A stretch of DNA of 64,000 nucleotides from Heteronotia binoei (Eukaryota). Positions 3,250 through 52,623 of the stretch are shown one piece after another (position 1 is the first letter of the stretch; each line of letters opens with the position of its first letter). A program made the position numbers and the translations under genes. The DNA lies in contig NC_083223.1 in the NCBI RefSeq assembly GCF_032191835.1, positions 151,962,001 to 152,026,000 on the forward strand, in the 5' to 3' direction. A model generated the notes under the pieces. It was not told where the DNA came from, searched no databases, and saw nothing but the letters and a program-made list of their open reading frames with translations.

Positions 3250-4480
3250 GAGATGCACACAGGAAGAAGTCTGGAGTTAGTTGATGAAAGCGCACCATTC
3301 ATTGGCGGGACAGGGCGTCCGCCCCTCCATTGCTAATGCCAGGCATGTGCTAAGCCAAAACAAGCATTCACTTAAGACTATGCAGTATAAACGCCCTGAC
3401 CAGCCTCATGACCGGAGGGGACTTAGAGGCAGGCTTATTGACGATGTGGACAACTGCCATGTTGTAACGCCCAAAATGCACCATGTGATTGGCCAGGAAG
3501 AGACCTCAAGAAATATACGTAGTTACCACTATGGGAAATAACTCCAAAAGCCAACTTACAGTATGACTCGGTGCCCAACAACTCCCTTGTCCAACGCACG
3601 ACACACCAATGCCCCCCAAAATACACCCGAAGCCAGGAGCCAACAGCATCCCAAACAGTTTGCACTCAGCCACAACCGCATGACCCCTCTCCTGAAGGAA
3701 ATGCCATTAAAAATTCCTCCAAAAGGTCTCCCACGCGTTAAGGTCGCTGTGCATACCCCCAGTCACCCGGGTATGGTGATGTGGCAAACGCAGGGCCGCC
3801 CTGCCGCTGCCAAATTGAAGCAGAAAGGCCAGCCCGGGGGCCGCCACTTTGCCTGCAAAGTTCAGGTGGCCCCCCGAGCTGCTGTAGCTCGAAGAGGGTG
3901 CCTTACCTTTGACCGTCACCAATGATACACACACCCGCAGATTCTCAACTTATCTAGCAGCAACCAGGATAGCTGGCACACTGTATCCAGCCCACCCCAA
4001 AAAGTCAACACTGTAGCTGGGCCCTCTATCTTCCCTGTGGCTAAGGGAACACCCGACTCTACCACCAGCCCTTAAACGCCGTTAACCATCATGAACATTA
4101 CCCCGATAACATAATTCAGCCAGGATGGCGATGTTGACCGACCACCCCTGAGGTAAGGTAAACGATGGATAAAATGAAACTCACCTGCGGCCTTCTAAGG
4201 GGAATAGCCAAAGATGACGCCCACAAATGTGGCACCTGAGGGGCTGAGAAAGGACCAGGACTCGCCCCTCCGCACACTCCCACCTAATCTTAGCCCTAGC
4301 AACGCGCTCCAAACCGCACTCTGACCGCAAATTTGAGCAGGAAAAAACGGGGTACGAGGACCTTGGTAAGGAACACTAAATCATCGTGAAGAACTGTCCC
4401 CCAGAATAACCTCTCTCATCGACCCCCGGATAGACCTACAACCATTCTCTAAGAACCCCCCCCCCCCTGAATGGGGCTGG
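3250..4480 (-). pseudogene. pol: DIRS/Ngaro RT-RNase H, disrupted, RT catalytic core deleted
   Basis: GEFHFIHRLPY..SVN, GVPLATGKIEGP, GHLNFAGKVAAPG, QTDAVGS, YNMAVVHIVN and ADALSR. No DIxxAF/LPMG/YLDD segment between about 4110 and 4095. Confidence 0.85.
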
Positions 4481-16664: not shown

Positions 16665-18617
16665 TTTTTTTTTTCATTTTTAAAAATTTATTATTCCAGA
16701 CATAACATACATACATTACCACGTAATTCTAGCATACTATACAACATACATCTTCTAACTCTTGCACCCACACCTACCACCCTTCCACCCATCCATACAA
16801 GAAGCTTAAAGGGTATTACTATTATACAGTTTCAATTTTCTCATATCAATTCCCAAGTTTCTGGCCCAAACATATATTGGTTCCCATGTCTTTCTACATT
16901 CTTGTAAATTTCCATCTCTTAACGTTTTGGTCAGTGTATCCATTTCAGCGGCTTCAAATAATTTTAATAAAAATTCTTCTCTATCAGGTATTTTGGCAAC
17001 TTTCCAGTATTTTGCATATAGAATTCTAGCGACCGTAATTATATGAAGTAATAGTTTTTTCTCCATTTTGGGAATACTCTCTTTACATATACTCAATAAA
17101 TACAGTTCCGGTGCATGTTGGAATCTTATTTTAAAAAAAAAATTTGGCTCCAGATATTAATCTGGGTCTGGTATTTTTTGGCATGTTCGCACTGCCACCA
17201 TATGTGGTATAGTGACCCCTTAATTTTTCTACATTTCCAGCATTAGTTTGAGTAGTTCGGATATATTTTAGCCAACCTTTCTGGGGTAAGATACCAGTGG
17301 TACATCATTTTGTATAAATTTTCTTTGAAAACCGAGGATTTTGTCAACTTTACATTTTGTTTCCAAAGTTTTTTCCATTCCGCCAAATCATTAGAAAATC
17401 CAAAGTCTTCTAACCATGTTATCCAACTCTCTTTCACTGTTTCATCTTGCATTTTAATTTGGAGTAGCCAATTATATATTTTTGAGATAAGTTTCTGATT
17501 ATCTTGAATTAATGTATCAAATTCGTTTAGAGTTTTGGAAAAACCTAATTCTTTATTCGATTGATATCTTGACTTAACCTGACATCTAACCCACCAGTCC
17601 AATTTTACGTTGTCATCTAATTTCAAGTTATTCTCCTTATCCAGCAATAGGCCATAATTATAATTAGTTCCCCAATCGTATAAATTTGGATGCGTAGAAG
17701 CCTCTACCAGAGATAACCAAGCTGGTGTATAAGTATAAAGCACATTTATAACCTCTATCCATGCGCTGTATATCGACTTCCTTATCTCATGTCTTAAAAA
17801 AATATTGTTTCTCTGAGGAGTCTTATATCAAATATAATCATGCCAACCTTTGACTAATCCTGCCCCTTCAAGTATTAACAATCTTTTATTTTCCAATACA
17901 AGCCAATCTTTTACCCATACTAAACAGCATGCTTTGTAGTATAGTCTCCATTCAGGTAATGCAAACCCTCCTCTTAGTTTGCTTTCTTGCAAAACTTTTA
18001 ATTTTATTCTCGGGTTTTTATTCTGCCAGATAAATGACATAGCCATTTTGTTGAGTTGTTGAAAAAAGGTTCTTGGTAAGATAATTGGAATCATCTGAAA
18101 CAGAAATAAAACTCTAGGTAATACATTCATTTTGATTGTTGCCACTCGCCCCAAGAGTGAGATTTGCAGGTCTCTCCATCTATCTAGGTCAATTCTAATT
18201 TCTTTTAAAAAAATTTCATAATTGTCTCGTTGTAGTGTCTTCAAATCGTTCGTTAAATAAATACCTAAATATTTTATTTTATTTTCAAGCTTAAACCCCG
18301 ATCTCCTTTCTAATTGCTCAATTTGCTCCTTACTCATATTTTTGGTCAAAAATTTGGTTTTTTGTACATTAACTTTGAATCCTGATACCTCTCCATATTG
18401 TTTTAATTTTTCCTTCAGATGTCCAATAGAAGAATTGGGGTCTTCTAATATAAATAATAAATCATCTGCAAAGACCTGAATTTTAAACTCTTCATTTTTA
18501 ATTTTTGCACCCCTAACTTCAGCATCCTCTCTTATTGTCTTTGTTAAAAATTCCAAAGTTAGGACAAAAAGTAAGGGAGACAAGGGACATCCTTGCCTAG
18601 TTCCTTGTACTATGTCT
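16665..18617 (-). mobile_element. 5'-truncated L1 (ORF2 RT C-half, Cys-rich tail, 3'UTR, polyA) inserted in the chromovirus RNase H
   Basis: [18 protein letters not shown] and CWKC...HIWWQC. Poly-T at 16665-16682 on plus. 14-bp TSD ATTCATT(A/G)GGGTGA at 16651-16664 and 18618-18631. Confidence 0.93.
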
Positions 18618-22498: not shown

Positions 22499-22641
22499 NN
22501 NNNNNNNNNNNNNNNNNNNNNNNNNNNNNNNNNNNNNNNNNNNNNNNNNNNNNNNNNNNNNNNNNNNNNNNNNNNNNNNNNNNNNNNNNNNNNNNNNNNN
22601 NNNNNNNNNNNNNNNNNNNNNNNNNNNNNNNNNNNNNNNNN
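22499..22641. other. Assembly gap (143 N)
   Basis: Run of N characters. Confidence 1.
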
Positions 22642-35578: not shown

Positions 35579-36886
35579 GACCTCCAGGGTCATCTAGTGC
35601 ACCCCCCCTGCACAATGCAGGAAACACACAACTACCTCCCCCTAAATTCACAGAATCTTCATCGCTGTCAGATGGCCACCTAGCCTCTGTATAAAAACCT
35701 CCAAGGAAAGAGAGCCCACCACCTCCCGAGGAAGCCTGTTCCACTGAGGAATCACTCTAACAGTCAGGAAATTCTTCCTAATGTTGAGCCGGAAACTCTT
35801 TTGATTTAATTTCAACCCATTGGTTCTGGTCCTACCTTCCGGGGCCACAGAAAACAATTCCACACCATCCTCTAGATGACAGCCTTTCAAGTACTTGAAG
35901 ATGGTGATCATATCACCTCTCAGCTGCCTTCTCTCCAGGCTAAACATGCCCAGCTCCTTCAACCGCCCTGAGACACTTCGGTGCGAAGGGCGGGGTATAA
36001 ATCCCAATATAAATAAAATAAATAAATAAACCTTTCCTCATAGGACTTGGTCTCCAGACCCCTCACCATCTTCGTCGCCCTGCTCTGGTCACATTCCAGC
36101 TTGTCTACATCTCTTTTAAAATGTGGTGCCCAAAACTGAACACAATACTCCAGGTGAGGTCTCCCAGAGCAGAGTAAAGCAATACCATCACATCACGTGA
36201 TCTGGACACTATACTTCTGTTGATACAGCCCAAAATTGCATTTGCCTTTTTAGCCACCACATCACACTGTTGACTTATGTTCAGCGTATGATCCACTAAG
36301 ACCCCTAGATCCTTTTCGCACATACTACTGCTAAGACAAGTCTCCCCCATTGTATAACCATGCATTGGATTTTTCCTACCTAAATGCAGAACTTTACATT
36401 TATCCCCATTAAAATTCATTTTATTGGTTTTAGCCCAGTTTTCCAGCCTGTCAAGATCTCCCTGTATCCTGTTTCTGTCTTCTACTGTATTTGCAACCCC
36501 TCCCAATTTAGTATCATCGGCAAATTAAATATGCATTCCCTCTATTCCTTCACCCAAATCATTTATAAAGATGTTGAACAAAACAGGTCCCAAGACAAAT
36601 CCTTGAGGCGCTCCACTTGTCCCTCCTCTCCAGGAGGATGAGGAACCATTCACAAGCACTCTTTGGGTGCGATCTGTCAACCAGTTACAGATCCACCTAA
36701 CGGTAACAGGATCCAAACCACATTTTACCAACCTGTCAACAAGGATAGTATGTGGAACCTTATCAAAAGCCTTACTGAAATCAAGATAAATGATGTCTAC
36801 AGCATTCCCCTGATCCAGTAGGGTAGTCACTTTCTCAAAAAAAGAGATCAGGTTACTCTGACAAGACTTGTTCTTGAGAAAACCAT
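35579..36886 (-). mobile_element. CR1 (element Z) RT C-half and 3'UTR
   Basis: [45 protein letters not shown] and FSLERRQLRGDMI, followed by the CR1 3'UTR. Confidence 0.92.
35965..36028 (+). mobile_element. 64-bp L2-family tail insertion in the CR1
   Basis: GCCCTGAG..GGGCGGGGTATAAAT..(AAAT)n flanked by AACC (35961-35964 and 36029-36032). Confidence 0.75.
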
Positions 36887-37677
36887 TACTTTGTTTGTTA
36901 ACCATGCAGACCTTCTCTTATACCTGTTTGTACCTTTCCTAACTTGTGGTATATATTTTATCTGAGCTTCTAGGATTGTATTTTTAAATAGCCTCCAAGC
37001 TTCCCCAAGGCTTTTGACTGTATTTACCTTTCCTTTCAGTTTCCTCTTCACATGCCTCCGCATCTCAGAGAATTTACCCCTTTTAAAGTTAAATATGGTT
37101 GTGCTGGTCTTTTGGGGCATCTCCCTATTTATATAAATAGTGAAATCAATAACGTTATGGTCACTGCTCCCAAGCGGTGTGATCACTTTTACATCTCTCA
37201 CCAGGTCTTGGGCATTACTTAGGACCAAATCCAGGATCGCCCCACCCCTGGTAGGTTCTGTGACCATCTTCTCCATAGCACAGTCATTGAGAGCATCTAG
37301 AAACTCAGTCTCTTTCTCTCGACCAGAACACATATTGACCCAATCAATCTGCGGGTAGTTAAAGTCACCTATGACAAAACAGTTTTTTCGTCTAGCCACC
37401 ATCTTTAAGCCTTCCATCATATTATAGTCATCCTCTGTCTTTTGATTTGGTGGGCGATAACAAACTCCCATAGTTAAATTGTCTTTTGGGCCCTCTATTT
37501 CAACCCAAAGCATTTCTATAAGGGAGTCTAATTCTCTGACTTCAGTCTTACTGGACCATATGCCCTCTCTGACATACAGAGCCACCCCACCTCCAACCCT
37601 TCCCTTCTTATCCTTCCGGTATAACTTATATCCAGGAATCACCATGTCCCACTGATTCTCCTCATTCCACCAAGTTT
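36883..37677 (-). pseudogene. Internal endonuclease fragment of a second CR1 subfamily (X)
   Basis: Open frame TWWNEE..GGGVALYV..VIGDFNYP..LDLVL..SDH. Fused to element Z RT through a CCAT microhomology at 36883-36886. No tail. Confidence 0.85.
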
Positions 37678-37920: not shown

Positions 37921-39129
37921 AGGAAGAGGAAGGCGGTGGTGATTGGTGACTCCTTGCTCAGAGAGGTGGAGTCCAAAGTGTGCCGACTGGACTTATCATC
38001 CGAGAGGTCTGCTGTCTGCCGGGTGCACGCATCCATCATGTGACAGAAAGGATTGGAAGACTTATCAAGCCCACAGATTACTATCCTTTCTTGCTGATCC
38101 ATGTGGGGACGAATGATACTGCCCATCACAGCCCTGAATGTACTAGAAAAGACTATGTGGCTCCGGGTCAGAAGGTGAAGGAGCTGGGCGCACAGGTTGT
38201 GTTCTCGTCAGTGCTTCCTGTTGAAGGCTGTGGCTTAGGACAAGAAAGAAGAATACTTCAAACAAACGACTGGCTACATCGATGGTGCCGTCAGGAAAGA
38301 TTCAGATTTCTGGACCATGGCTTACACTTTTGAGATGGTGGCCTTCTATTGGGAGATGGTTAGCACCTTACGGCTGTAGGGGAAAGGGTGTTTGGTAACA
38401 GCCTTGCTAACCTAATAAGGATGGCTTTAAAATAAATTGTACGGGGGAGCGAGACAATAATTCAAAGCCTTGTATGATGCCAGAAACTGGGGATAAGAAC
38501 ATTAAAGATTTGCAGAGAGTGGCGCATACACTAGGTAATGTTAGCTTGCAGGCTTGTATGGAAACTAAACTCTCGGGATGCATAAAATGTGGATTCCGAT
38601 GTCTCTACACTAATGCACAGAGTATGGGAAACAAACAGGAGGAACTGAAAGTCCTAATATGGGAAAGAGACTATGACATAATAAGCCTTACTGAAACTTG
38701 GTGGGATGACACTCACAAATGGAATATTAGGATTCAGGGGTACAACTTATTTAAAAGGGACAGACAAATGAGAAAGGGCAGAGGCATAACAGTATATGTG
38801 AAGGAGGTATATACTTGTGAGGAAATATGTGAATCTGAGCATGGCAGTGCAGTTGAGAGTCTCTGGGTAAAAATAAAAGGAATAAGAAATAACAGTTATA
38901 ATATTGTGGGGGTCTGCTATAGACCACCAAGCCAGGCAGAGGACTTGGATGAGATACTCCTACAACAGATTGCAGAGTTCTCCAAGAGAAGGGATGCAGT
39001 GATCATGGGAGATTTCAGTTACCCAGACATCTGTTGGAAGTCCAACTCTGCTAAAAATGAAAAGTCAGATAGATTCCTCATTTGTCTTGCTGACAACTTC
39101 CTTTTTCAGAAAGTGAGGAAGGAAACAAG
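37921..39129 (+). pseudogene. CR1 (element Z) ORF1 C-half (SGNH esterase) and ORF2 endonuclease
   Basis: RKAVVIGDSLL, CLPGARI, LIHVGTNDT; then [24 protein letters not shown] and DNFLFQKV. Confidence 0.92.
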
Positions 39130-42100
39130 CGGTGCAAGAAGTTGAAATTCTCCCCTCCACAATCGCCGACCATTCACCCATTATGTTATCTTTAAGTACC
39201 TCTAAAAAGAAGTCAGGATGGAGAATGAATCTAAGTCTCATGAGGGATAAAAGATTTATCCGATACATTGAGGAAGAAATGAAAAATTTTTTTCACACAA
39301 ATATCCAGAGTGGCGTTTCTTATACTACTATTTGGGAAACCAGCAAGGCCTATTTTAGGGGACTGGTCATCAGTTATAGTGCTAGAAAGTGGAAGGAAGA
39401 CAGCAGTAATTTGGTGAAATGGTCGGAATTAATTAAAATTAAAGAATCGCAGCTGAAAACCAATCCCACATTAAAGGAGTTAAGGACAGAGATTAGGAAT
39501 CTCCAACATAAAGTTCATTTAATTTTTTCAGATCAGGTAGAAAGAAAGATAGCCTACTCCAAAGCCTTTTTTTTTGAGAACGCCAATAAACCGGGTAAGT
39601 GGCTGGCATACAAAGTCAGGAAGGAAAGAGGGAAAAAAGTGATAAAATCGTTAAAGGATAAGAACGGGCAAAATACCTCGGTTTTAGAAGAAATGAAAGT
39701 AATAGTGCAGGAGTTCTATAAGAATTTATATAGAAAACAGGGAAACCATGAGTCTGATCAACAAGATTATTTGAAGAACAGGGTCCGGACTTTATTATCT
39801 AATGAACAGAAAGAAATTTTAACGGCTCCAATTACGATGTGTGAAATAGTAGAAGCTTGGACAAAAATTAAAAGTAATAAGGCGCCTGGACCTGATGGTA
39901 TTCCTCCGGAATATTACATAACCTTTAAGGAGAATATAATAGATCCTTTTAAAAATCTATTAGACGAGGTTTGGTGTTCGGCCAAAATCCCAGAGTCGTG
40001 GAGGTACAGTAATGTAGCTCTTATCCCCAAGCCTGGGAAAGACCCTGATAATATTGGAAACTATCGCCCTATATCTTTATTAAATACAGATTATAAAATA
40101 TTTACGTCAATTCTGGCAAGTAGATTAAAACAGGTACTGAGGGAAACTATACATACTGATCAATCTGGATTTTTACCAAAAAGACAAATGCACACAAATG
40201 TTAGGCTGTTATTTAATTTTTTGGAATACTCGGAGTTTAATAGGGATAAACAGTTAGCCTTTTTATTTCTCGACGCGGAGAAGGCCTTTGATAATTTAGA
40301 ATGGAATTTTATGTTAGAACTCTTGGAAAAATCTAATTGTGGGGCAAAATTTGTTGAAAATATACGGGCTATATATGACAAACAGTTTGCTAGGATAATC
40401 GTTAATGGTGACTTAACAGAAGAAGTCCATCTTACCAAGGGTACGAGACAAGGTTGTCCCCTTTCTCCCTTACTGTTTATTTTTTCTCTTGAAGTTTTAA
40501 TTGACTCAATTAGGTTGGATGACAAAGTTGAGGGGATAAAGGTTAAAGGAGAAAACTATAAAATATTAGCTTACGCAGATGATATGGTTCTTGTGTTGCA
40601 AAATCCTTTGGACTCAATAGAGACGGTTTTGAATCATTTGGAAGAATATGGGAAGGTTGCCGGCTTAAAAATAAATAAAAGTAAGTCGAAGTGGCTAACC
40701 AAAAATATGACGGCACAGGCAATTGCGGATTTGGAAAGAAAATCAGGATTTAAAAGAGAGAAAAAAATCAGATATTTAGGTATAGTTGTTTCGGAAAAAT
40801 GCAGTGCCACTTATGAAAATAATTATGTTCCTTTATTAAAAGAAATAGAGTCTTTATTCAAATGTTGGGTTAATTTGAAACTTTCATTTATGGGCAGAGT
40901 GTCATTACTGAAAATGAATATTCTTCCCAAAGTTTTATTTTTGTTTCAATCGGTGAATTTTGCTATGAGGGCTCCTTTTCTTAAGAAATTAAATCAATTG
41001 GCTAGAAATTATGTTTGGCAAGGAAAGAAACCTCGAATAGGCTGGAAAATACTAGCTGACAAAAAAGAGAACGGAGGTTTAGGGCTACCTGATTTTGAGA
41101 TTTATCATACTGCTTGTTCAATTTGTTGGTTGAAAGACTGGGTAATGTTAGAAAACACCCGTGTGTTAGCAATAGAAGGGGCCGATTTACAAGCCGGTTG
41201 GCACGCTAATATGTGGTATATTAAGAAACCACAAAATTACTTTAAAAATCATTTAATTCGTCAGTCTTTATTGCTAACTTGGACAAAAATAAAAAGGAAA
41301 ATCTATGACAAAACGCCTAGGTGGATATCCCCAATGGAGGCATCTATTCGTCCACAACTGTGGTCTCCCGAAAAATCTCTAAGATATTCGGATTTATTAG
41401 ATGAGAAGAATAAAATGAGGAGGAAGGATGACTTAGAACAAAGTGGAATTACTCTGGATTGGTGGGTAATGACCCAAATTATGGCTAAATATAATTGTGA
41501 TAAAATTGTTGGGTTCACGAGAACAAATTTTGACTTTGACAAGTTAATAACAGATAAGACTGGGAAAACGATAAAGAAGGTTTATAATTATTTACTACAA
41601 ATTAAATTGGAGGACGAATCGGTTAAAAACGTAATGGTGAAATGGTCATCGAATTTAAAATACAATATAACGTTGGAACAATGGGCAATGTTATGGCGGA
41701 ATAATTTTAAGATCATAAAACCGGTTAATTACCGGGAGAATTTTTTCAAACTCTTTCACAGGTGGCATATTACACCGGTTTTAATAAACAAAATTAATCA
41801 CGACTTCCCACCTAATTGTTGGAAATGCGGAGTGAAGATTGGAACCTACTATCATCTATGGTGGACATGTAAGGTGTCCAAAAAATACTGGAAAGGTATT
41901 CATAGAATTTTGACTGAAATTTTGAAGATTAATTTTCCGCTTAAACCGGAGTTTATGTTATTGTCCTTAGTACGTGGGATGGTTCCCAGAGAGGATGAAT
42001 TCATTGTAGTTTACATTGTAACGGCGGCTAGAATGTTATTGGCTCAAAATTGGAAATCTAAAACATCCCCAAAAAGGGAAGAATTAATTTACAAAATTAT

Positions 42101-42596
42101 GCAGTTAATGGAAACAGACATATTGGTTAACACAATACATGGAAAATTGAAGGAGGACGCAATAAAAAAATGGGAAAAGGTATATATATGGTTAGAGAAA
42201 AATTAAAAATAGGTTAGGATAAAAGATTATAATATTTTATATTCTGTATATTGGATAACGGTAGTACTGTTTAAATTAAAGTTATAATATAACATAATAA
42301 TATATTGTTTAAATTAAAGTTATAACAAGTTGAATATTGGGAATTTTATGCCACAGTCATACCTTAACTTGGATAAAGGAAGGGTGTTATAGGATAATGT
42401 TTATCCTATAAATTCTGTTACAGGGGTTGAATAAGTAATTTATGATTTGAGGATATCTAAGGAGGTATGTACTTTATTATTTTGTCGTATGTGTAATGTA
42501 AATTTGTTTGTGGTATCATTGTTTTGGTTTTTTATGTATTGCAATGGATGAATAAAATTATTGAAACTCAAAAAAAAAAAAAAAAAAAAAAAAAAA
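39130..42596 (+). mobile_element. 5'-truncated young L1 (L1-A)
   Basis: Uninterrupted ORF2, 3'UTR, AATAAA at 42551 and a 27-nt polyA (42570-42596). No TSD. Confidence 0.95.
39132..42206 (+). CDS. L1 ORF2p (EN C-terminus, RT, Cys-rich domain), 1024 aa open, N-terminally truncated
   Basis: [37 protein letters not shown] and CWKC..HLWWTC. Confidence 0.93.
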
Positions 42597-43494
42597 GAAG
42601 ATACAATTCTGGCACATGCTTAACTTGTATTTTCAAGATTTTTTGAATCCAAATATTAACTTGAGCCCAATATTTCCTGGCTTCTTTGCATTGCCACCAT
42701 ATATGGAACAACGATCCTTCAACTTCTCGGCATTTCCAACATTTATTAGAGTATGTGGGGTAAATTTTGGCCAGTCTATTTGGTGTAAGATACCATCTAT
42801 ATACCATTTTATATAGATTTTCTTTGAGATCAGTTGGCTTTATTAGTTTTAAATTCTGTTTCCATAATTTTTCCCATTCATCCAGATCAATATTATAGCC
42901 AAAATCCTTAAGCCAGCGGATCCAAGCTTCTTTTACAACTTCATCCTGCATCTTAACTTGAAGTAGCCAATCATACGTTTTAGAAATTATCTTCTGCTTG
43001 GACTCTAAGATAAGATCTAATTCAATTGGTTTATTCGAAAAGCCCCTTTCTTTGTCTTTCTGAAATCTTGATTTGAGTTGACACTGGAGCCACCAATTTA
43101 ACTTAGATAGTTCTTCCTCAATCAAATCATTTTGGCTATTCAACAAATAGGCATAATCTTGTGGGTTATCCCAATTATACAAGTTGGGGTGAGTCAGAGC
43201 TTCTATCGGAGATAACCACTTTGGAGTATAAGTATACATCAGCTTAATTTCATCCCAAATCTTATACAAGGATCTTCTTATTTCGTGTCTGAAAAAGCGT
43301 CCAGTTTTTACAGGAGTGTGATACCACATATAATTGTGCCAGCCTTCTCCCAAACCTACGCCTTCAATAGTCATTAGCCTCTTATTATCTAGCTTACACC
43401 AATCCCTTAACCATGCAATACAACAAGCCTTATAGTACAGATTCCAATCTGGGAGAGCAAGACCACCTCTTGATTTGCTGTCTTGTAAAATTTT
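42597..43494 (-). mobile_element. L1-B ORF2 3' segment (opposite orientation to the rest of L1-B)
   Basis: KILQDSKSRGGLALPDW...CWKC..HIWWQC..PELYLL; continues the frame that stops at 49010. Confidence 0.92.
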
Positions 43495-45247
43495 CCGGAA
43501 AGATGGCGGAGTGACGCAAAGCTCCTTTCCCCGTCTCGGGAGGGAACTTTGTTTGTGGGGTAATCGAGGGGGCTTCCCGGCCGGGAAGTACCTCTTAAGG
43601 AGCTGTCTGGAGACGCTCCGAAGCCTGGGGGGCTTTCTGGACGTGGGGGAGGAACGGAGGTTCCTCACTCAGTGCCAGTTTTCCCCCTGGCCGATACCCC
43701 AGCAACACCTCGGTGCCTAACTGTGCCGCCGGGAAAGGGAGATTGGAGAGGAACCTTAACTCCCTCAAGTGCACCCCGTAGCGTTTTTTCCTACCTGGGT
43801 CGTCCCACCCTTGGAATGCGAATGGTGCAGCTCATGGCGATGGCGAGAAGAAAATAAAGCTGGTAAGCGGTTTGTGTGCTGCACAGGCTGATAGGGAGCG
43901 GAGCCGCGGCGTGTGGGCATCGGTGGAGGACGTGAATGGCTGAGGAGGCGGGCGGCTTGGCAGCTTAGCGGCGACTGAATGAGCGATCGTTTTGAGGGGA
44001 AACAACAAAGAGCTTGGCTGTGATCAAAGAATATTGGCAGAAGGAAGACAGGGGGAAGTAGGGGGTTGAGAAGCAATTCTTCTTTTCCTGTCTCTGAGAC
44101 ATTAAAAGTGGCTGTCAGTCCGTGACCGATGTGAGAACTGTGATCTGAGTTAGGAGAGAGGAAGCTGTCGGTAATGGCGGACGGGAGCTGAAGTTCTCCT
44201 TCAGGAGGCCGGACGTGGAAGACGCAGGCGGCGCTGGTGGTGAGCGGAGACAGAAACTTTCTGAGTGCGTTTGACGATCTTAACTCTCCCCCCCCCTTCG
44301 CTTGTCCACCTCTGGTTTTCTTTATTTTTTTTGCCTTTCATCTGCGTTGTCGCTGGAGCCTTATTTTTCTTTTGTTATTTTACTTTTCACCTTGTTGAAG
44401 AGGATGGGTTTTGTTTACGCAAATACTTATTTTTGGGATAATTAATCGTTGGTATCAGCTCAAAGGGTAGAGTAGTGGTTCTTAGCAGCTTTTGCTGCGG
44501 CTGCTCTCTATTGAAGATTGTGGTTTTTAAATTTATAACTATTGGAAACGGATTAGGCACTATATTTGGATCTTTGAAACCTTCCTTCTTGGAGTATAAG
44601 AGACTGGAACTTTTGGACTCTAGAAAACATTTTCCTTTTCATCTTTCAAAACGTGGGGATTTATTAGGGCTAAAACTAGAACTTGGCTTTTAGAACACTG
44701 AAGACAGCTAAAAATCTATTTGACACTAAGACACTAAGACATTAAAATTGGACACTAAGCTACCAAGACAATATTAAGATCCTGAAACAGTTAAGTAACA
44801 AGAGAAGGGAAGAAAGAAGGAAGAAGAAGGAGCAGAGAAGATAAGGAACAGAGAAGATAAGACTGTGTAAATACTTATGTTGATTATTTCTTGACTCAGA
44901 ACTGTAATTTTTGAGTTATTTACTTATTCACTTACTATAAATAATTCTAGGGCTAAATTTTGATAGGTAATCCCTAATGCGTTAATGAAATGAATTGATT
45001 TAATATCTGATACCTAATAATTGATTGAATTATTGACTGAGCTCAAAGAATTATTGATTTTATAGAATTGCTGTATTACTTATTGAGCATTTTTATTGGA
45101 TCCCAGATAAGCTTGAATCACTGACTGAGCTTAAGAAGTTATTTAGCTGAATATTGATTATTGATAGTCTTTCCGCTTATTGATATATTGAGCTGTTGAA
45201 AATTACAAATTGGGTCAGTTTATAAGGTTAGTGACAGTAGCATCATT

Positions 45248-46237
45248 ATGACGGAAACAAAGATTAAAAAATACCTACAAGGTACTCCTCCGGCAGGGGG
45301 AGGTAAGGTGCAAGTCGCTGTCAACCAAGACGCGTTGGAAAAATTACAGAGTACAGTTACTGCTGGATTTAAACAGAACCAAGATGCTTTAGATGGACTG
45401 AAAACAGACTTGATGACTCAAATTAGGAAAACCAATGATCAGTTGGCAGAATTTCAAAAGCAGCTGTTGGCCAATACACAACAAGTTCATGGTTTTACAG
45501 CTAAAGTTGAGAGAATGGAAGATCGGGAGAAGCGCACAATCAATACGGTTAGAGAAAACCAAACAGGATTGATGGAGCTAGAAGAACGGGTGATGAGGCT
45601 CGAAATGGAGAAAGCTTCAACTATTCTTCGCTTTCAAAATCTACCAGAAGAAAAGGAGGAAGATATAATCAGTAAAATTAGAGGCATCTTAATTATTGAT
45701 GATGAAGAACTATTGGAAGAAGGTCCAAGAGATATTCTTTGGGCCAAAAGAGTTTCTTCGAGCTACATAAGGAAATTCAAACTTCCCAGAGAAGTTCAAG
45801 TAAAGTTCGCCCGTCCAGAAACTGTGGAAAGGATTCTGCGGAAGGCAAGAGATTATGAAATGAATTGGAAGGGAACGAAGATCAAAGTATTGAAAGAGAT
45901 ACCCTGGAGTGTCCGACAGAGGAGATTCAAGTTCAGGAAATTGTCTACTTGGTTAATGAAGCAAGAAATTCAATTTAGATGGCTTGTCCCGCAAGGTCTT
46001 TTCTTTACATTTCAAACTAAGAGATACAATATTACTACTGAGGCAAAGATGGAAGAATTTTGTGATGAGTTTGTGAAGCGAAATGGATCTGAATTGGGAG
46101 ACGAACAGGAGGTAGAAGGAGCTAAGAAGTTCACTGATGATAAGTCTCCCAAAAAGAAACCTGAGAAGATCAAAACCAGGCTCCAGACTAAGAAGGACTC
46201 AGCCATGATATCGGATAGTATTCACTCACCAAAATGA
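45248..46237 (+). CDS. L1 ORF1p (coiled coil, RRM, CTD), 329 aa intact
   Basis: Heptad-rich N-half, ILRFQNLPEE, PREVQVKF and RQRRFKF..FRWLVP. Stop overlaps the ORF2 start as ATGA (46234-46237). Confidence 0.9.
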   Translation: MTETKIKKYLQGTPPAGGGKVQVAVNQDALEKLQSTVTAGFKQNQDALDGLKTDLMTQIRKTNDQLAEFQKQLLANTQQVHGFTAKVERMEDREKRTINTVRENQTGLMELEERVMRLEMEKASTILRFQNLPEEKEEDIISKIRGILIIDDEELLEEGPRDILWAKRVSSSYIRKFKLPREVQVKFARPETVERILRKARDYEMNWKGTKIKVLKEIPWSVRQRRFKFRKLSTWLMKQEIQFRWLVPQGLFFTFQTKRYNITTEAKMEEFCDEFVKRNGSELGDEQEVEGAKKFTDDKSPKKKPEKIKTRLQTKKDSAMISDSIHSPK

Positions 46238-49010
46238 ATTCTAAGATGGAAACTAAAATACTCTCTTTGAACGTCAATGGATTAAATGAATCCGGGAAGA
46301 GGAAGAGAACTTTTCTGCAATTGAAAAAATCTGGCGCCCACATTATCTGTCTACAAGAAACGCATATTAGGAAAGACAATGTGAAGTATTTGGAAAACAA
46401 GAAATTGGGTACTTTATATGCTTCATGTGATCCTTTTAAAAAGAAGAAAGGGGTAGCTATTTTTGTTCCTCATCACATTAAGTCGAGCTGCCTATTTTCG
46501 GATGAACAAGGAAGAATCATCATAGTCGAGTTGGAGTTAAATGGATTTAAAACAATCCTTGGGAACATTTATGCCCCTAACGAAAATCAAGAAAAATTTT
46601 ATCAAGTATTGTGCACGAAACTTAGGGAATTCAATTCAGATAGGTACTGCATAGTTGGCGATTACAATGCGATATTTGATATCAAAATGGATAAAAAATA
46701 TGACGACCCTCAAAAAAAGAAGAAGAATCGGAATTTACTACCTAATTCTTTTTTGAAGCTGGCTGAAGAATTAAACTTAGTAGATGCCTGGAGAACAAAG
46801 AACCCGAACACGACAAATTTTACTTTTTAATCACATTCACATAAATCTTGGTCCAGAATAGATATGACCTGGGTATCCTTGAGTATGATTTTGTCAGTTA
46901 ACCAAGTTGATATCCTCCCTCAGTCATATGCTGATCACAACCCAATTTTGTTATCTCTATAGGAGCAATCAAGAAATCCTCGATGGTCTCTCAATTTGCA
47001 AATTTTAAAAGAAACTCAATTTCTGGAAGTAGCTAAAAAAGAGATTCAGGAATTTTTTAAACTCAACTTGGAGAAAGACACGAAGATCCCAGTTATTTGG
47101 GACGCATTCAAGGCCTTCTTTAGAGGAGTCGCCATCCGTTACTCAAAGAGGAGGAAGAGAGAACAAAGAAAATCTTACAATGAACTTGTAACAAAATTGA
47201 AATACTATGAGAAACAACAGAAAACTGGGAATCCAAGAGAGGTGAAGGCCAGAATTACTTTTATCCAACATCAGATAAATATTCTTTTAGCAGAAGAAAT
47301 GGAGAAAAAACTAAAATGGACAAGACAAAACTATTTTGAAAATGCTAACAAAGTGAGTAGATGGTTGGCTTACAAATTAAGGAAGGAAAAGGAGAAGAAG
47401 ATCATAAAAATGTTGAAAAATGATGCCAAGGAGGAGGTGTTTCAAAATTTTCAAATGAAAGACATTATTCAAAACTTTTATAGGAATCTGTACAAAAAGC
47501 AAGAGATTGAACAATTCAAGCAAGAAAATTATATTAAAGGAGTCGAAATGAAACAATTAACAAGGGAACAGCAAGCAAGTTTGGAGAGCCCAATCTCAAT
47601 GCAGGAATTGGTTGAGGTAATTAAAACCCAAAAAAGTAACAAGACCCCAGGTCCAGATGGACTTCCGATTGAGTTTTTTAGAGCCTTTGAAGATTTGTTA
47701 TTGCTGCCCTTTAAGAAGGTAATTGAGAATGTCTATCATTCAGGCGAGACTCCAGATTCTTGGAAAGAAGCGCTTATTACTCTCATTCACAAAGAAGGCA
47801 CCGACCCATCAGAAATTAAAAATTATAGACCAATTTCACTTTTAAATAGTGATTATAAGATTTTTGCAACAATTTTAGTGAATAGATTGAAGAAGGTGAT
47901 TACCGACTTAATTCATGAGGATCAAACAGGTTTCGTCCCAGGACGACTAATGAATCAGAATGTGAGGCTACTTTTAAATGTGATTGAATATTACAGAGAT
48001 CACCCGGACAAAGAATTTGCTGCTATTTTTGTGGATGCAGAAAAGGCTTTTGATAATGTTAATTGGAATTTCACCAAAGTGACATTGGATGCGATTGGTT
48101 GTGGTGATAGGTACCGCAGAATGGTCGAAGCGATTTACTCAAAGCAGAATGCGAGAGTGAGTTTTAATGGAGTGATGGGACGGTGGCTCAGTGGTAGATC
48201 ATCTGCTTGGGAAGCGGAAGGTCCCAAGTTCAATCCCTGGCATCTCCAAAAAAGGGTCCAGGCAAATTGGTGTGGAAAACCTCAGCTTGAGACCCTGGAG
48301 AGCCGCTGCCAGTCTGAGAAGACAATACTGACTTTGATGGACCAAGGGTCTGATTCAGTATAAGGCAGCTTCATATGTTCATATGATGTCTGATTTAGTA
48401 GAAATACAACAAGGCACTAGACAGGGATGCCCGTTATCCCCATTGCTTTTTATCTTGACGTTAGAACCTTTAATAAAGAAGATTAGAGAAGACAACAAAA
48501 TTCAAGGAACCAGAATTAATAACGTGGAATTTAAGTCTTTGGCGTTTGCGGACGATTTAGTATTTATCTTGGAACAACCCATCTCTTCGATAGTCCCTCT
48601 GAAGCAAAGACTACGAGAATTTGGAGAAGTATCTGGTTTCAAACTGAATGTGTCTAAGACAAAAATTTTAATGAAAAATATGGAGAAAATTCAAGTTGAA
48701 TCTTTAGAACAGCTTTCAGGATTTAAGCAAGAAAAAAAGATAAAATACCTTGGAATTTATTTGACGAATGATTTAAAGACTTTGTACAGAGACAATTATG
48801 AAAAAATATTGAAAGAAATACGGGATGATCTAACTAACTGGAAAGAGCTCCATATTTCGCTCTTAGGTAGAGTCGCTACAATAAAGATGAACATTCTTTC
48901 AAGGATCTTATTTCTCTTCCAAACAATCCCAATCACCTTACCCAAACTATTTTTCCAGAAACTTAACTCTATGATCAAGTTGTTTATCTGGCAAGGGGAA
49001 AAGGCCAGAA
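46234..49010 (+). pseudogene. L1-B ORF2 (EN-RT), with stops and a SINE insertion
   Basis: SLNVNGLN, CLQETH, VGDYN, DHNP, QGCPLSP and FADD. Stops at 46828-46830 and near 46960. Confidence 0.92.
48178..48383 (+). mobile_element. Young tRNA-derived SINE inserted in L1-B ORF2
   Basis: A box TGGCTCAGTGG, B box GTTCAATCC and a TTCATATG tail. TSD TGATG (48173-48177 and 48384-48388); removal restores FNGVMSDLVE. Confidence 0.9.
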
Positions 49011-49490
49011 AAAAAGGCTTCTTTTCTTATGTTCAGAGTAAGAAAAAGTGAAAGGACATGGTAAGCCTGTTGCGAGGGCAGGAAAGTGAAATTGTAACAG
49101 GTAATGAAGAGAGGGCGGAACAGCTCAATTCCTACTTTTCCTCAGTCTTCTCTTCTGAGGGAAATGGTGCTCAACATGGCAAAAACAGAACATATAAGAA
49201 GGGTATGAAGTTCCAACCTAGGATCAGCGTAGGGGTAGTACATAAACACCTAGTTTCTATAAATGAAACCAAGTCCTCAGGGCCAGATAAACTGCATCCA
49301 AGGGTTCTGAAAGAGCTTGCAGATGTAATTTCTGAGCCTCTGGCCATTATTTTTGAGAATTCTTGGAGAACAGGAGAGGTGCTGGAAGATTGGAGGCGGG
49401 TGAATGTTGTCCCCATCTTCAAGAAGGGAAAAAAAGATGATCTGGGTAACTACCGACCTGTCAGCTTGATGTCTATCCCTAGAAATGCTT
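49011..49490 (+). pseudogene. CR1 (element Z) ORF2 tether / RT start
   Basis: KKGFFSYVQSK, AEQLNSYFSSVF, SSGPDKLHPRVLKEL and NYRPVSLMSIP. Confidence 0.9.
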
Positions 49491-49494
49491 TAAC

Positions 49495-50218
49495 ATCCTG
49501 AGGGAGTTTCTGCTCCAACAGGACGTGGACCTGGCTTGCGTGACCGAGACCTGGGTGAGGGAAGGGGAGACAGTGGCTCTCTCCCAAATGGCCCCCCCGG
49601 GATACTCGGTCTTTCACCAATCGCGGACCAGCGGGCGGGGGGGAGGAGTGGCGTTACTCATACGGGAGGATTACTCCTTTCGGGCCCTCCCGGACCCAAG
49701 GATCGATGGTATTGAATGTGCCGGTTTGGCGTGGGATGCCGGAGAGGGGTTGGCAGTCTGGTTGGTGTACCGTCCGCCTAACGCACCAACCGGCGCCTTA
49801 CCATCACTATTGGAGGCAGTGGCGGGCTGGGCGTTGAGGTTCCCGAGGCTTATGGTCTTGGGTGACTTCAACGTCCATGCCGACGACACGGCCTCCACTC
49901 AGGCGATGGACCTAGTGTCTTCCATGGCGACACTGGGGCTCTCTCAATTTGTTACGACTCCCACGCACCAAGCCGGACACACACTAGACCTGATCTTTGC
50001 GTCCGGGATTTCGGTGAGCGATATCGCGCTGGAAGCGGTACCATGGTCGGATCACCTAGCCCTTAAGGCTCGTGTGGGGACGCCACCCCAACCCTGTATG
50101 GGCGGAGAGCCTATTTTGGCTCACCCTCGGAGCCTGATGGACCCGGAACGGTTCCAAACGGCCCTGAGGGAACCCTGGCCCACTAGCAATTCCCTCGATG
50201 GCCTTGTGGAAACCTGGC

Positions 50219-50249
<31 letters not shown>

Positions 50250-52623
50250 TTTTATTTTTATATCCCGCCCTCCCCGCCAGGCGGGCTCAGGGCGGCTAAC
50301 AGACATGACCGTTGGCAAGACCGACTAACCAGGGCCATTGACGAAATAGCACCCCGGCGCCCTCTGCGCCCTCGTAGGAGGTTGGCCCCATGGTACACCT
50401 TGGAATTGCGCCAACTCAAACAAGGGCTCAGACGACTAGAGAGGCAGTGGAGACATACTCGGGACGAAGCAATGAGAACATCCTACAGAACGCTTATGAA
50501 GTCGTATGAGATGGCAGTCAAGGCCGCAAAGAAAAATTACTTTGCAGCCAAGATTGCATCCGCAGATTCGCGCCCAGCACAACTGTTTAGAATAATTGGG
50601 GACCTTATAACTTTGCCACAAGGCAAACCAAACATTAGAGAATTGGAGATTGGCTGTGAGGCATTTGCGAAATATTTTGCGGATAAAATCTCATTGCTCC
50701 GCCAAGACCTGCCTACCACCTTGGAAACAGTGAGTGAAATTGAGGCTCCGTGCCTGTTTTCGGGGTTGGTCCTGGATCGCTTCGACCCGCTCGACCTGGA
50801 GGAAGTCGATGGGATCCTCTCCGCTGCTCGCCCAACAACATGTGATTTGGATCCTTGCCCCTCTTGGCTGATTAAATCTTGCCAGAGGGAGCTCAGAAGT
50901 CCTCTACGGGACTTCATAAATAGATCCCTCGTAGAGGGGCACTTCCCAACACCTCTGAAAGAGGCGTTGGTTCGCCCTCTCTTAAAAAAATGTACAGCAG
51001 ACCCGGCCGAATTGGCGAATTACCGTCCGGTGTCTAATCTACCATTCCTAGGCAAAATTATTGAGAGGGCAGTGGCGTTGCAGCTACAGAGGTTCCTAGA
51101 TGACGCTTCCGTCCTTGACCCGTGCCAGTCTGGGTTCCGACCGGGCCACGGGACGGAGACAGTGCTGGTCGCCTTGGTGGATGACCTCCAGCGGCATCTG
51201 GATCGGGGCGGCTCTGCGGTACTGATGTTATTAGACCTGTCGGCGGCATTTGATACAGTCGACCATCAGTTACTAAAGCGCCGCCTTGCCGACATAGGGG
51301 TTAGGGGGCTGGCCTTACAGTGGCTTTCCTCCTTCCTCTCTGATCGGGGACAAAGGGTGGCCATTGGCGATCCCAGAGGCACACACTTGATTGTGGGGTG
51401 CCTCAGGGAGCAGTTCTCTCCCCAATGCTGTTTAACATTTATATGCGCCCCCTTGCCCAGATTGTCCGGAGGTTTGGGCTGGGTTGCCATCAATATGCAG
51501 ATGACACCCAGCTCTATCTACTAATGGACGGCTGGCCTGGCTCCGCCCCAGGGAACCTGGATCGGGCCTTGCAGGCTGTAGCGGCGTGGCTTAGATTGAG
51601 TGGGTTGAAGTTGAACCCAGCGAAGACAGAGGTCCTTTGCGTGGGTCGCGGCGCCCAGGGAGGGGAAATAGCTCTCCCAACCTTCGACGGCGCACCATTG
51701 GAACCAGTGCGCCAGGTAAAGAGTTTGGGTGTTTTACTGGAGCCTTCATTATCAATGGAGGCCCAGATAGCAGCCACTGCCAAGTCAGCATTCTTTCATC
51801 TGAAGCGGGCAAGGCAGTTGGCCCCCTTCCTGGAACGCCGCGACCTCGCAACAGTGATCCATGCAATGGTCACCTCAAGATTGGACTACTGTAATGCCCT
51901 CTACTTGGGGCTACCTCTGTGCCGGACTCGGAAGCTGCAGCTAGTGCAGAATGCGGCGGCCAGGCTGTTACTGGGGCTCCCGAAATGGGAGCACATACAG
52001 CCGGGGCTGCGCGGACTGCACTGGCTGCCAGTTATCTACCGAGTCCAGTACAAAGTGTTGGTTATTACCTTTAAAGCCCTATATGGCCGAGGACCTGCCT
52101 ACCTAAGGGACCGTCTCTCCCCGTATGAACCCCAGAGGGCACTGAGGTCAGCAAGTAAAAACAAAATGACCATCCCTGGGCCGAGAGAGGCCAAACTCCA
52201 AAACACCAGAGTACGAGCCTTTTCAGTTGCGGCACCTGCACTGTGGAACCAGCTCCCGGAGGAGGTGCGGGCCCTGCGGAACCTCGACCAGTTCCGCAGG
52301 GCCTGCAAGACTGCCCTTTTTAGACACGCCTATAATGATACGGACTGCTGAGTTGCAATGAACGAAGAACCGCCATCTCTAACATCATTTAAACTGGCAG
52401 ATTCAGCGCCAGAACAGCTATTACTGCCAGATATATATATAATGTAATGTAAAATTAAGTATTTTAACTGAATTAACGGGTTTTTATATGTGTAATTTTA
52501 ATTGCTAATCTAATGTTTTATTATTTATGTTAATATATTACTTACTGTTAGCCGCCCTGAGCCGCTTTGCGGGGAGGGCGGGGTAGAAATAAAATTTATT
52601 ATTATTATTATTATTATTATTAT
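49495..52623 (+). mobile_element. L2 LINE, nearly complete ORF2 plus 3'UTR and (ATT)n tail
   Basis: VTETW, GGGVALL, LGDFNVH, SDH, YRPVSNLPF, LDLSAAFDTVDH, PQGAVLSP and YADD. CpG-rich with few lesions. Tail GCCGCCCTGAG..GGGCGGG. No TSD. Confidence 0.92.
50221..50312 (-). mobile_element. 92-bp antisense L2-family tail inserted in the L2
   Basis: (TAA)n plus TATCCCGCCCTCCCC..GCTCAGGGCGGCTAACA. TSD TGGCAA (50215-50220 and 50313-50318); removal restores ETWQDRL. Confidence 0.88.

What the first reader, a model, noticed from the sequence alone, without database searches (positions are those of the whole stretch)
42597..49016. Twin-priming-like L1 in which the entire 5.5-kb 5' part, up to the 5' terminus, is inverted
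Seen: the plus segment ends at FIWQGEKAR (49010) and the minus segment starts at KILQDSKSRGGL (43494). These are adjacent in ORF2 (compare IWQNKNPRIKLKVLQESK in the 17828 ORF). The internal junction joins that point to the L1 5' end with a TT microhomology (TTTT|CCGGAAAGATGGCG), and the outer junction is an A-run that could have served as internal primer. This is the geometry of twin priming, described mainly for mammalian L1; a full-length inverted arm in a reptile L1 would be notable.
Basis: partly seen in the sequence, partly recalled or inferred. Interest (0 to 1): 0.72.

Follow-up and report, generated by a model that had tools for sequence, protein, structure and literature searches.

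The report
Half-flipped lizard L1 insertion (twin priming)
A dead lizard-type L1 jumping gene has its front 5.5 kb flipped relative to a 0.9-kb back piece, which fits the known "twin priming" copying accident; its tail and target-site repeats were lost to a later L1 insertion, so it is an ordinary and less clean example.

Summary
One L1 ("L1-B") lies in two arms. ORF2 codons about 639-944 are on the minus strand (42598-43494). The 5'UTR, ORF1 and ORF2 up to about codon 635 are on the plus strand (43495-49009). Against two other L1s in the window the arms are adjacent, with 9 nt (3 codons) missing.

The plus arm starts with TTCCGG...ATGGCG, the published 5'-terminal motif of lizard clade-1 L1. 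The outer flank AAAAAAGG gives a T6 3' end that could pair with the A-rich L1 site at the gap. Both arms stand in the same relation to the other two L1s.

This is twin-priming geometry, with the inverted cDNA running to the RNA's 5' end (confidence about 0.7).

The A28 tail of a second, 5'-truncated L1 (39137-42597) abuts it. About 0.5 kb of the host CR1/L2-type LINE is also missing. A single event therefore cannot be proven.

- Reads could not be consulted.
- No same-family copy was found.
- The scan already noted cleaner twin-primed LINEs elsewhere in this genome (s1-330134, s1-340698).

Known mechanism, new example; low interest.

The parts
42598..43494 (-). L1-B non-inverted (3') arm: ORF2 codons equivalent to ORF2-A aa 639-944, open frame with no stops. 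It is cut at its 3' side; TT at 42596-42597 may still belong to it. There is no 3'UTR and no poly(A).
   Evidence: tblastn; blastn vs L1-C; translation; stop count
43495..49009 (+). L1-B inverted (5') arm. It holds the 5'UTR (43495-45247), ORF1 (45248-46237, intact, 329 aa) and ORF2 from 46234 (ATGA overlap with ORF1) to the equivalent of aa 635. In-frame stops lie at 46828 and 46960.
   Evidence: (Pfam EN and RT)
43493..43509 (+). Inner junction and L1 5' terminus: TT|CCGGAAAGATGGCGG. TTCCGG...ATGGCG matches the lizard clade-1 L1 5'-end motif. TT is shared by both arms, giving a possible 2-nt microhomology.
   Evidence: sequence; motif GACTTCCGGTGN8ATGGCG in PMC5381506
49009..49028 (+). Outer junction and right flank: A-run 49009-49015, then GGCTTCTTTT/CTT. 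The complement ends in T6-3', the proposed second primer. TTTT/C at 49025|49026, or TCTT/A at 49028|49029, is a possible first-strand nick site and predicts a 16-19-nt TSD.
   Evidence: sequence; inference from the TPRT model
48177..48380 (+). tRNA-derived SINE inserted later into ORF2 of the plus arm. The L1 alignment is interrupted at 48172-48385.
   Evidence: Rfam tRNA hit 48177-48248; tblastn gap; related copies at 5.2-6.0 kb
39137..42597 (+). L1-A: a second L1 of another family, 40-46% aa identical to L1-B. It is 5'-truncated at the end of the EN domain, has an open 1024-codon ORF2, a 3'UTR and a pure A26-28 tail (42570-42597) that abuts the cut end of the L1-B minus arm.
37921..39136 (+). 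Left host fragment (CR1/L2-type LINE 'y'): ORF1 with a GDSL-like esterase and the EN domain up to ...[11 protein letters not shown].
49010..49500 (+). Right host fragment (CR1/L2-type LINE 'z'): linker and RT start (KKGFFSYV...NYRPVSLMSIP). It is colinear with 'y', with about 0.5 kb missing between them.
   Evidence: (ORF2-A aa 149-326 at 48998-49498, 25.7% identity)

Best explanation
L1-B is a single retrotransposition product made by twin priming. It inserted into a CR1/L2-type LINE with its sense strand on the window's minus strand.

Proposed steps (inferred unless marked):
1. One target 3' end primed cDNA from the 3' part of the L1 RNA. This gave the non-inverted arm, now 42598-43494.
2. 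The other target 3' end, ...GAAGCCTTTTTT-3' (the complement of 49010-49021), paired with the A-rich stretch of ORF2 just upstream (AGA-AUAAAAUUA-AAA in the related L1-C).
3. From there it primed a second cDNA that ran 5.3 kb to the RNA's 5' end.
4. The two cDNA ends were joined at 43494|43495, possibly through a 2-nt overlap. The ~9 nt under the second primer were lost.
5. Later a SINE entered ORF2.
6. A 5'-truncated L1 of another family (L1-A) then integrated by ordinary target-primed reverse transcription at a pyrimidine run (CTTCTT/) in the non-inverted arm. In that event or afterwards, about 1.1-1.5 kb were lost: the rest of L1-B ORF2, its 3'UTR, tail and left TSD, plus about 0.5 kb of the host LINE.

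Shown: the geometry, the 9-nt gap, the sequences at all junctions, the 5'-terminal motif, and L1-A's tail abutting L1-B. Inferred: the order of events, the priming, and the deletion.

The element is dead and has no function.
For: - The arms are adjacent in ORF2 against two independent references, with 9 nt missing.
- The arrangement is the one twin priming predicts: the outer end of the inverted arm is next, in L1 coordinates, to the inner end of the other arm.
- The plus arm starts TTCCGG-4 nt-ATGGCG. Lizard clade-1 L1s start GACTTCCGGTGN8ATGGCG (PMC5381506).
- The 5'UTR is 1753 bp, 43.9% GC, with 58 CpG, against 45.2% GC and about 56 CpG in that paper.
- The reconstructed ORF2 is about 3.7 kb, inside the published 3,645-3,813 range.
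- Both arms sit in the same place relative to the other L1s. Identity to L1-C is 68% and 58%, to L1-A 46% and 41%, while A-C is 46% and 40% in the same two regions. Base composition is the same in both arms.
- The right flank AAAAAAGG gives a T6 primer end, and a TTTT/C site lies 16 nt further on.
- In humans 18-22% of L1 insertions are 5'-inverted, and 46% of those have the two cDNA ends within 20 bp (PMC12016303).
- Anolis L1 that pass 1 kb tend to be complete (PMC5389967).
Against: - No poly(A), 3'UTR or TSD of L1-B exists. A relaxed tblastn for the ORF2 C-terminus finds it nowhere in the 64 kb. One event therefore cannot be proven, and an extra ~1.1-1.5-kb loss must be assumed.
- No other copy of the family was available, so the subfamily identity of the arms, the exact 5' terminus and the exact sequence at the gap are indirect.
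- The spacing in the 5' motif differs from the Anolis consensus (4 versus 10 nt), and GAC is absent.
- A 13/16 match between L1-A's first 16 nt and the flank after its tail is not explained by this order of events.
Confidence: 0.7

Rival explanations
1. Tailless double internal priming (endonuclease-independent-like twin priming). Both ends of a ~0.5-kb gap or break in the host LINE primed inside one L1-B RNA, at the equivalents of aa 944 and aa 636. L1-B therefore never had a tail or TSD here. L1-A inserted afterwards at the edge of L1-B with a 16-nt TSD, whose left copy coincides with L1-A's own 5' end through the annealing pathway.
For: - L1-A's first 16 nt (39137-39152, AAGAAGTTGAAATTCT) match the 16 nt after its tail (42594-42609, AAGAAGATACAATTCT) at 13/16. 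Only 9 of 2000 shuffles reach this.
- It needs no separate 1.1-1.5-kb deletion.
- About 0.5 kb of host LINE is missing, as is typical of break-repair insertions (my knowledge of endonuclease-independent L1 insertions).
- A scan note reports a tailless L1 retrocopy elsewhere in this genome (s1-322590, untested).
Against: - L1-A's nick would have to fall within about 5 nt of a pre-existing host/L1-B junction, which is a strong coincidence.
- The 13/16 match was found post hoc, and both 16-mers are explained by L1 ORF2 homology.
- Endonuclease-independent insertions are rare.
- The right flank has an EN-like TTTT/C site at TSD distance.
Confidence: 0.12
2. DNA-level inversion after insertion. A normal full-length minus-strand L1-B later had its 5' 5.5 kb inverted by two breaks and rejoining.
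For: It produces the same arm order and a small loss at one breakpoint. A first-reader note on an overlapping stretch proposes a large inversion here (s1-321107).
Against: - One break would have to fall within about 5 nt of the L1 5' terminus, with no flanking DNA inverted.
- The two CR1-type EN fragments at 36851-37645(-) and 38474-39142(+) overlap and are only 33-34% identical, so they are not halves of one split element.
- No larger inversion restores L1-B, and its 3' end is nowhere in the window.
Confidence: 0.07
3. Assembly artefact: a wrong join of repeat-containing reads or contigs created the inverted arrangement.
For: The region is a dense mosaic of LINEs.
Against: - The two arms do not overlap in L1 coordinates, so this is not a fold-back duplicate.
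- No other copy of this family exists in the window to be confused with.
- There are no N runs near the junctions; the only one is at 22499-22641.
- A mis-join that leaves a 9-nt gap and lands on the L1 5' terminus is unlikely.
Confidence: 0.06
4. Two independent L1-B fragments that happen to lie side by side.
For: The L1 density in the window is high.
Against: - Breakpoints within 9 nt of each other, in the one arrangement of four that fits twin priming, give a chance of well under 1% (my estimate).
- The plus arm has no 3' end of its own.
Confidence: 0.03

Closest known systems
Twin-primed (5'-inverted) L1 insertions of human and mouse (Ostertag and Kazazian 2001; statistics in PMC12016303)
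   Same: The 5' arm is inverted next to a sense 3' arm. The arm ends are within 20 bp in L1 coordinates (here a 9-nt gap). There is short possible microhomology at the inner junction. The target 3' end is complementary to the internal priming site.
   Different: The inverted arm is 5.3 kb of L1 and reaches the 5' terminus, whereas the human germline median is about 0.75 kb. The element is a lizard clade-1-type L1. Poly(A) and TSD are missing here because another L1 replaced that end.
Anolis-type lizard clade-1 L1 families (L1_AC1-15; Boissinot and Sookdeo 2016, PMC5381506)
   Same: It has a long CpG-rich 5'UTR, a TTCCGG...ATGGCG 5' end, overlapping ORF1 and ORF2, an A-rich sense strand, and an ORF2 of about 3.7 kb.
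   Different: The 5'UTR is 1753 bp, above the published 792-1,465 range. The spacing in the 5' motif is 4 rather than 10 nt. The family could not be named, because the consensus sequences are not held.
L1 insertion-mediated target deletions, and endonuclease-independent, tailless L1 insertions in mammals (from my own knowledge of the human literature)
   Same: The L1-B 3' end and about 0.5 kb of host LINE are lost exactly where L1-A joins. L1-B has no tail and no TSD.
   Different: Which of the two processes acted cannot be decided from this one locus.

Membership tests
Twin-primed L1 insertion | Two pieces of one L1 in opposite orientation, with the 5' piece inverted and lying on the far side from the tail | tested here: met
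   Minus arm aa 639-944 at 43494-42595. Plus arm from the 5'UTR to aa 635 at 43495-49009.
Twin-primed L1 insertion | Arm ends adjacent in L1 coordinates, with a small gap or overlap | tested here: met
   9 nt (3 codons) are missing relative to L1-A and L1-C.
Twin-primed L1 insertion | Both arms derive from the same source RNA or subfamily | tested here: inconclusive
   Relative identities to L1-C and L1-A are consistent on both sides of the break, and composition is the same. No same-family copy was available.
Twin-primed L1 insertion | Poly(A) tail at the end of the non-inverted arm | tested here: not met
   The minus arm stops inside ORF2, against the A28 tail of L1-A. The L1-B C-terminus is absent from the window. 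Loss to the L1-A event is inferred, not shown.
Twin-primed L1 insertion | One pair of target-site duplications around both arms | tested here: inconclusive
   The left target junction is gone. The present outer flanks (39122-39136 and 49010-49030) share no repeat.
Twin-primed L1 insertion | Target 3' end complementary to the internal priming site | tested here: met
   The flank AAAAAAGG gives ...CCTTTTTT-3'. The L1 site at the gap is A-rich (AGA ATA AAA TTA AAA in L1-C; AGA ... AAA ATT in L1-B). The L1-B sequence inside the gap itself is inferred.
Twin-primed L1 insertion | EN-type first-strand nick site at TSD distance | tested here: inconclusive
   TTTT/C lies 16 nt, and TCTT/A 19 nt, right of the outer junction. 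Such sites are common in AT-rich DNA.
Lizard clade-1 L1 | 5' extremity GACTTCCGGTGN8ATGGCG | tested here: inconclusive
   TTCCGG and ATGGCG are present at 43493-43508, but 4 nt apart instead of 10, and GAC is absent.
Lizard clade-1 L1 | Long CpG-rich 5'UTR; ORF1 and ORF2 without a spacer; ORF2 with EN and RT domains | tested here: met
   The 5'UTR is 1753 bp, 43.9% GC, 58 CpG. ATGA overlap at 46234-46237. Pfam Exo_endo_phos and RVT_1 hits.

The most novel reading that the evidence does not exclude
L1-B never had a tail at this locus. Two DNA ends about 0.5 kb apart in the host LINE both primed inside a single L1 RNA, which would be twin priming without poly(A) priming and possibly without the L1 endonuclease. 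The result would be a tailless, TSD-less, half-inverted near-full-length L1. L1-A later landed at its edge with a 16-nt TSD-like repeat.
Probability: 0.12. Interest if true: 0.45.

Novelty: new member of a known kind. Interest (0 to 1): 0.25.

Why it matters
It adds a further example showing that twin priming operates for a reptile L1 in its own host. In cell-culture work, 5' inversions were seen almost only with human L1 in human cells (PMC4245944). No paper in the searched library describes twin priming in lizards.

The second cDNA running 5.3 kb to the cap fits the reported tendency of Anolis L1 to be either very short or complete (PMC5389967).

It has no functional consequence. This copy is also a poorer witness than the TSD-flanked cases the scan already holds for this genome.

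Tried and rejected
- A word search with L1-B ORF1 found nothing at E<=1e-10.
- A word search with the minus-arm protein found one 43%-identical Podarcis fragment. Same-family copies are therefore not in that collection.
- The consensus FASTA of PMC5381506 is not held, and the Ostertag and Kazazian paper is not held.
- The scan index returned nothing by sequence for the 5'UTR.
- The L1-B 3' end was sought with relaxed tblastn across the whole window and not found.
- The "15-kb inversion" reading (s1-321107) was considered. The two CR1-type EN fragments overlap at 33-34% identity. The internal gap of the minus-strand CR1 at about 36.87-36.90 kb does not match the ends of fragment z. No inversion other than one coincident with the L1-B 5' arm restores any element.
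- Relative age of L1-A and L1-B from stop codons (0 versus 2) and tail purity is not statistically informative.
Full report
WHAT IS THERE

The stretch 37.9-49.5 kb is a nest of LINEs. From left to right on the plus strand:

- **Host fragment "y" (37921-39136, +).** A CR1/L2-type LINE fragment. Its ORF1 has a GDSL-like esterase (Pfam PF13472, E 8.7e-6, below the curated cutoff). Its EN domain runs up to ...[11 protein letters not shown].
- **L1-A (39137-42597, +).** It is 5'-truncated at the end of its EN domain. It has an open 1024-codon ORF2 (Pfam RVT_1), a 3'UTR, and a pure A-run at 42570-42597.
- **L1-B minus arm (42598-43494, -).**
- **L1-B plus arm (43495-49009, +).**
- **Host fragment "z" (49010-49500, +).** Again a CR1/L2-type fragment (KKGFFSYV...NYRPVSLMSIP). 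It aligns to ORF2-A aa 149-326 at only 25.7% identity.
- **An L2-like element from 49.5 kb onward**.

Calling y and z "CR1-type" rests on motifs I know from CR1 and L2 ORF2, not on a tool test.

CHECK OF THE OBSERVATION

tblastn with ORF2-A places the plus arm at aa 1-426 and 428-635 (46897-48171 and 48386-49009). It places the minus arm at aa 639-944 (43494-42595).

blastn against the third L1 in the window (L1-C, minus strand, 17-18.6 kb) gives 48399-48993 to 18618-18024 and 42642-43494 to 17143-17998.

The codon-level comparison is:

| Element | Sequence around the break |
|---|---|
| L1-A | ...[19 protein letters not shown]... |
| L1-C | ...FIWQNKNPR-IKL-KVLQESK... |
| L1-B plus arm | ...FIWQGEKAR (ends; AGA = 49007-49009) |
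| L1-B minus arm | KILQDSK... (starts; AAA = 43494-43492) |

Three codons (9 nt) are therefore missing and nothing is duplicated. For unrelated fragments of a ~6.7-kb element, such adjacency would arise well under 1% of the time (my estimate).

IS THE PLUS ARM COMPLETE AT ITS 5' END?

- The arm starts ...TT|CCGGAAAGATGGCGGAG.
- Boissinot and Sookdeo (PMC5381506) report that lizard clade-1 L1s share a conserved 5' extremity, GACTTCCGGTGN8ATGGCG. They also report 5'UTRs of 1,268 +/- 198 bp, 45.2% GC and about 56 CpG, and frequent overlap of ORF1 and ORF2.
- L1-B has TTCCGG and ATGGCG at its first bases, although 4 rather than 10 nt apart and without GAC.
- Its 5'UTR is 1753 bp, 43.9% GC, with 58 CpG, and is CpG-rich from its first 100 bp.
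- It has an ATGA overlap of ORF1 and ORF2 at 46234-46237.

I conclude that the arm reaches the family's 5' terminus to within a few nucleotides. This rests on a published motif from Anolis, not on copies of this family.

ARE THE ARMS ONE ELEMENT?

No other copy of the family is in the window or in the protein collection, so the direct test was impossible. The indirect test is consistent:

| Region | B vs C | B vs A | A vs C |
|---|---|---|---|
| 208 aa before the break | 68.1% | 45.7% | 46.1% |
| ~297 aa after the break | 58.1% | 41.4% | 40.1% |

On both sides B is the closer relative of C, and all three pairs fall by the same proportion. Sense-strand base composition is the same in both arms. 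The reconstructed ORF2 is about 2.57 kb + 9 nt + 0.90 kb + about 0.24 kb missing, or about 3.7 kb. This lies inside the published 3,645-3,813 range.

MECHANISM

With L1-B's sense strand taken as "top" (the window's minus strand), the order is:

flank - inverted (5' end to aa 635) - sense (aa 639 onward).

The outer end of the inverted arm is the point adjacent, in L1 coordinates, to the inner end of the sense arm. The inner junction joins that sense arm to the L1 5' terminus. This is exactly what twin priming predicts.

The flank next to the inverted arm reads AAAAAAGGCTTC on the plus strand. The priming strand would therefore end ...GAAGCCTTTTTT-3'. The L1 RNA at the gap is A-rich (AGA AUA AAA UUA AAA in L1-C). 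The 9 missing nucleotides correspond roughly to the footprint of that primer.

A TTTT/C site lies 16 nt further right, and TCTT/A lies 19 nt further. Either could be the first-strand nick, predicting a 16-19-nt TSD. That is in the 10-20-bp range reported for human 5'-inverted inserts (PMC4245944). All priming steps are inferred.

In humans, 18-22% of L1 insertions are 5'-inverted, and 46% of these have the two cDNA ends within 20 bp (PMC12016303). In Anolis, L1s either truncate before 1 kb or tend to be complete, and about 40% are complete (PMC5389967). A second cDNA running to the cap is therefore not surprising in a lizard.

The minus arm has no 3' end. It stops at ...PELYLL (CTT CTT), directly against L1-A's A-run. 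A relaxed search for the missing about 80 codons of ORF2 finds nothing in the 64 kb. Host fragments y and z are colinear but lack about 165 codons (about 0.5 kb) between them, judged on ORF2-A coordinates.

The simplest history is as follows:
1. L1-B inserted by canonical twin priming.
2. L1-A later integrated at CTTCTT/ in the sense strand of the L1-B 3' arm.
3. In that event or afterwards, about 1.1-1.5 kb were lost: the L1-B ORF2 end, 3'UTR, tail and left TSD, plus about 0.5 kb of host LINE.

L1-A's 5' junction shows a possible GTGCA overlap with fragment y.

One observation does not fit neatly. L1-A's first 16 nt match the 16 nt after its tail at 13/16, and only 9 of 2000 shuffles reach this. 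That looks like a TSD merged with the L1 5' end by annealing. Taken at face value, it implies that L1-B already abutted fragment y, tailless, before L1-A arrived. That would mean both primers of the L1-B event were internal. This requires L1-A's nick to fall within about 5 nt of an existing junction. I rate it about 0.12.

Stop-codon counts (L1-A 0, L1-B 2) and tail purity do not settle the order of events.

RIVALS

- **Later DNA inversion.** One break would need to fall within a few nucleotides of the L1 5' terminus.
- **The large-inversion idea noted on an overlapping stretch (s1-321107).** I found no support for it. The minus-strand CR1-type element at 35.6-37.6 kb and fragment y overlap in their EN domains at 33-34% identity. 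The internal deletion of the former does not match the ends of z.
- **Assembly error.** It is unlikely, because the arms do not overlap and the family is single-copy in the window.
- **Chance juxtaposition.** It is negligible.

COMPARISON AND NOVELTY

This works like, and most probably is, a twin-primed L1 insertion. As a member of that class it fails the poly(A) test and cannot be tested for a TSD. Both failures have a visible cause, L1-A.

In the library searched, no paper describes twin priming in lizards. One experimental paper found 5' inversions essentially only with human L1 in human cells (PMC4245944). A lizard example therefore has modest comparative value.

The scan's own notes list two cleaner cases in the same genome. 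One is an L1 with a 4.1-kb inverted arm inside one TSD pair (s1-330134). The other is a non-L1 LINE (s1-340698). I did not test either.

VERDICT

- Observation: confirmed.
- Interpretation: partly supported.
- Mechanism: known.
- Example: new but damaged.
- Interest: low.

Noticed in passing
window 39137-39152 and 42594-42609: The first 16 nt of the 5'-truncated L1-A (AAGAAGTTGAAATTCT) match the 16 nt following its A-tail (AAGAAGATACAATTCT) at 13/16; 9 of 2000 shuffles reach this. It could be chance, or a TSD merged with the L1 5' end by annealing. The second reading would change the order of events at this locus.
   Followed up: partly
window 48172-48385: A tRNA-derived SINE of about 200 bp (Rfam tRNA hit 48177-48248) is inserted in ORF2 of L1-B, with a possible 5-6-nt TSD (G/A)TGATG. 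Related copies lie at 5.2-6.0 kb on the minus strand.
   Followed up: partly
window 50219-50302 and 52545-52623: The L2-like element at 49.5-52.6 kb carries, between its EN and RT parts, an inverted copy (87-90% identical) of its own 3' end, including the (AAT)n tail. It is probably a nested, severely 5'-truncated copy of the same family in the opposite orientation.
   Followed up: no
window 36848-36905: The minus-strand CR1-type element at 35.6-37.6 kb has a clean internal deletion. It joins ...SAWLTNK directly to ...[11 protein letters not shown], so roughly 270 codons between the EN domain and RT motif 3 are missing. It might be a deleted derivative.
   Followed up: no
window 39132-42206: L1-A keeps an uninterrupted 1024-codon ORF2 fragment and a pure 26-28-nt A tail, so it looks like a very recent insertion.
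   Followed up: no
window 49500: Host fragment z stops at ...NYRPVSLMSIP, where the L2-like element begins. No continuation of z's RT domain was found downstream of the L2-like element, so this is not a simple nested insertion.
   Followed up: partly
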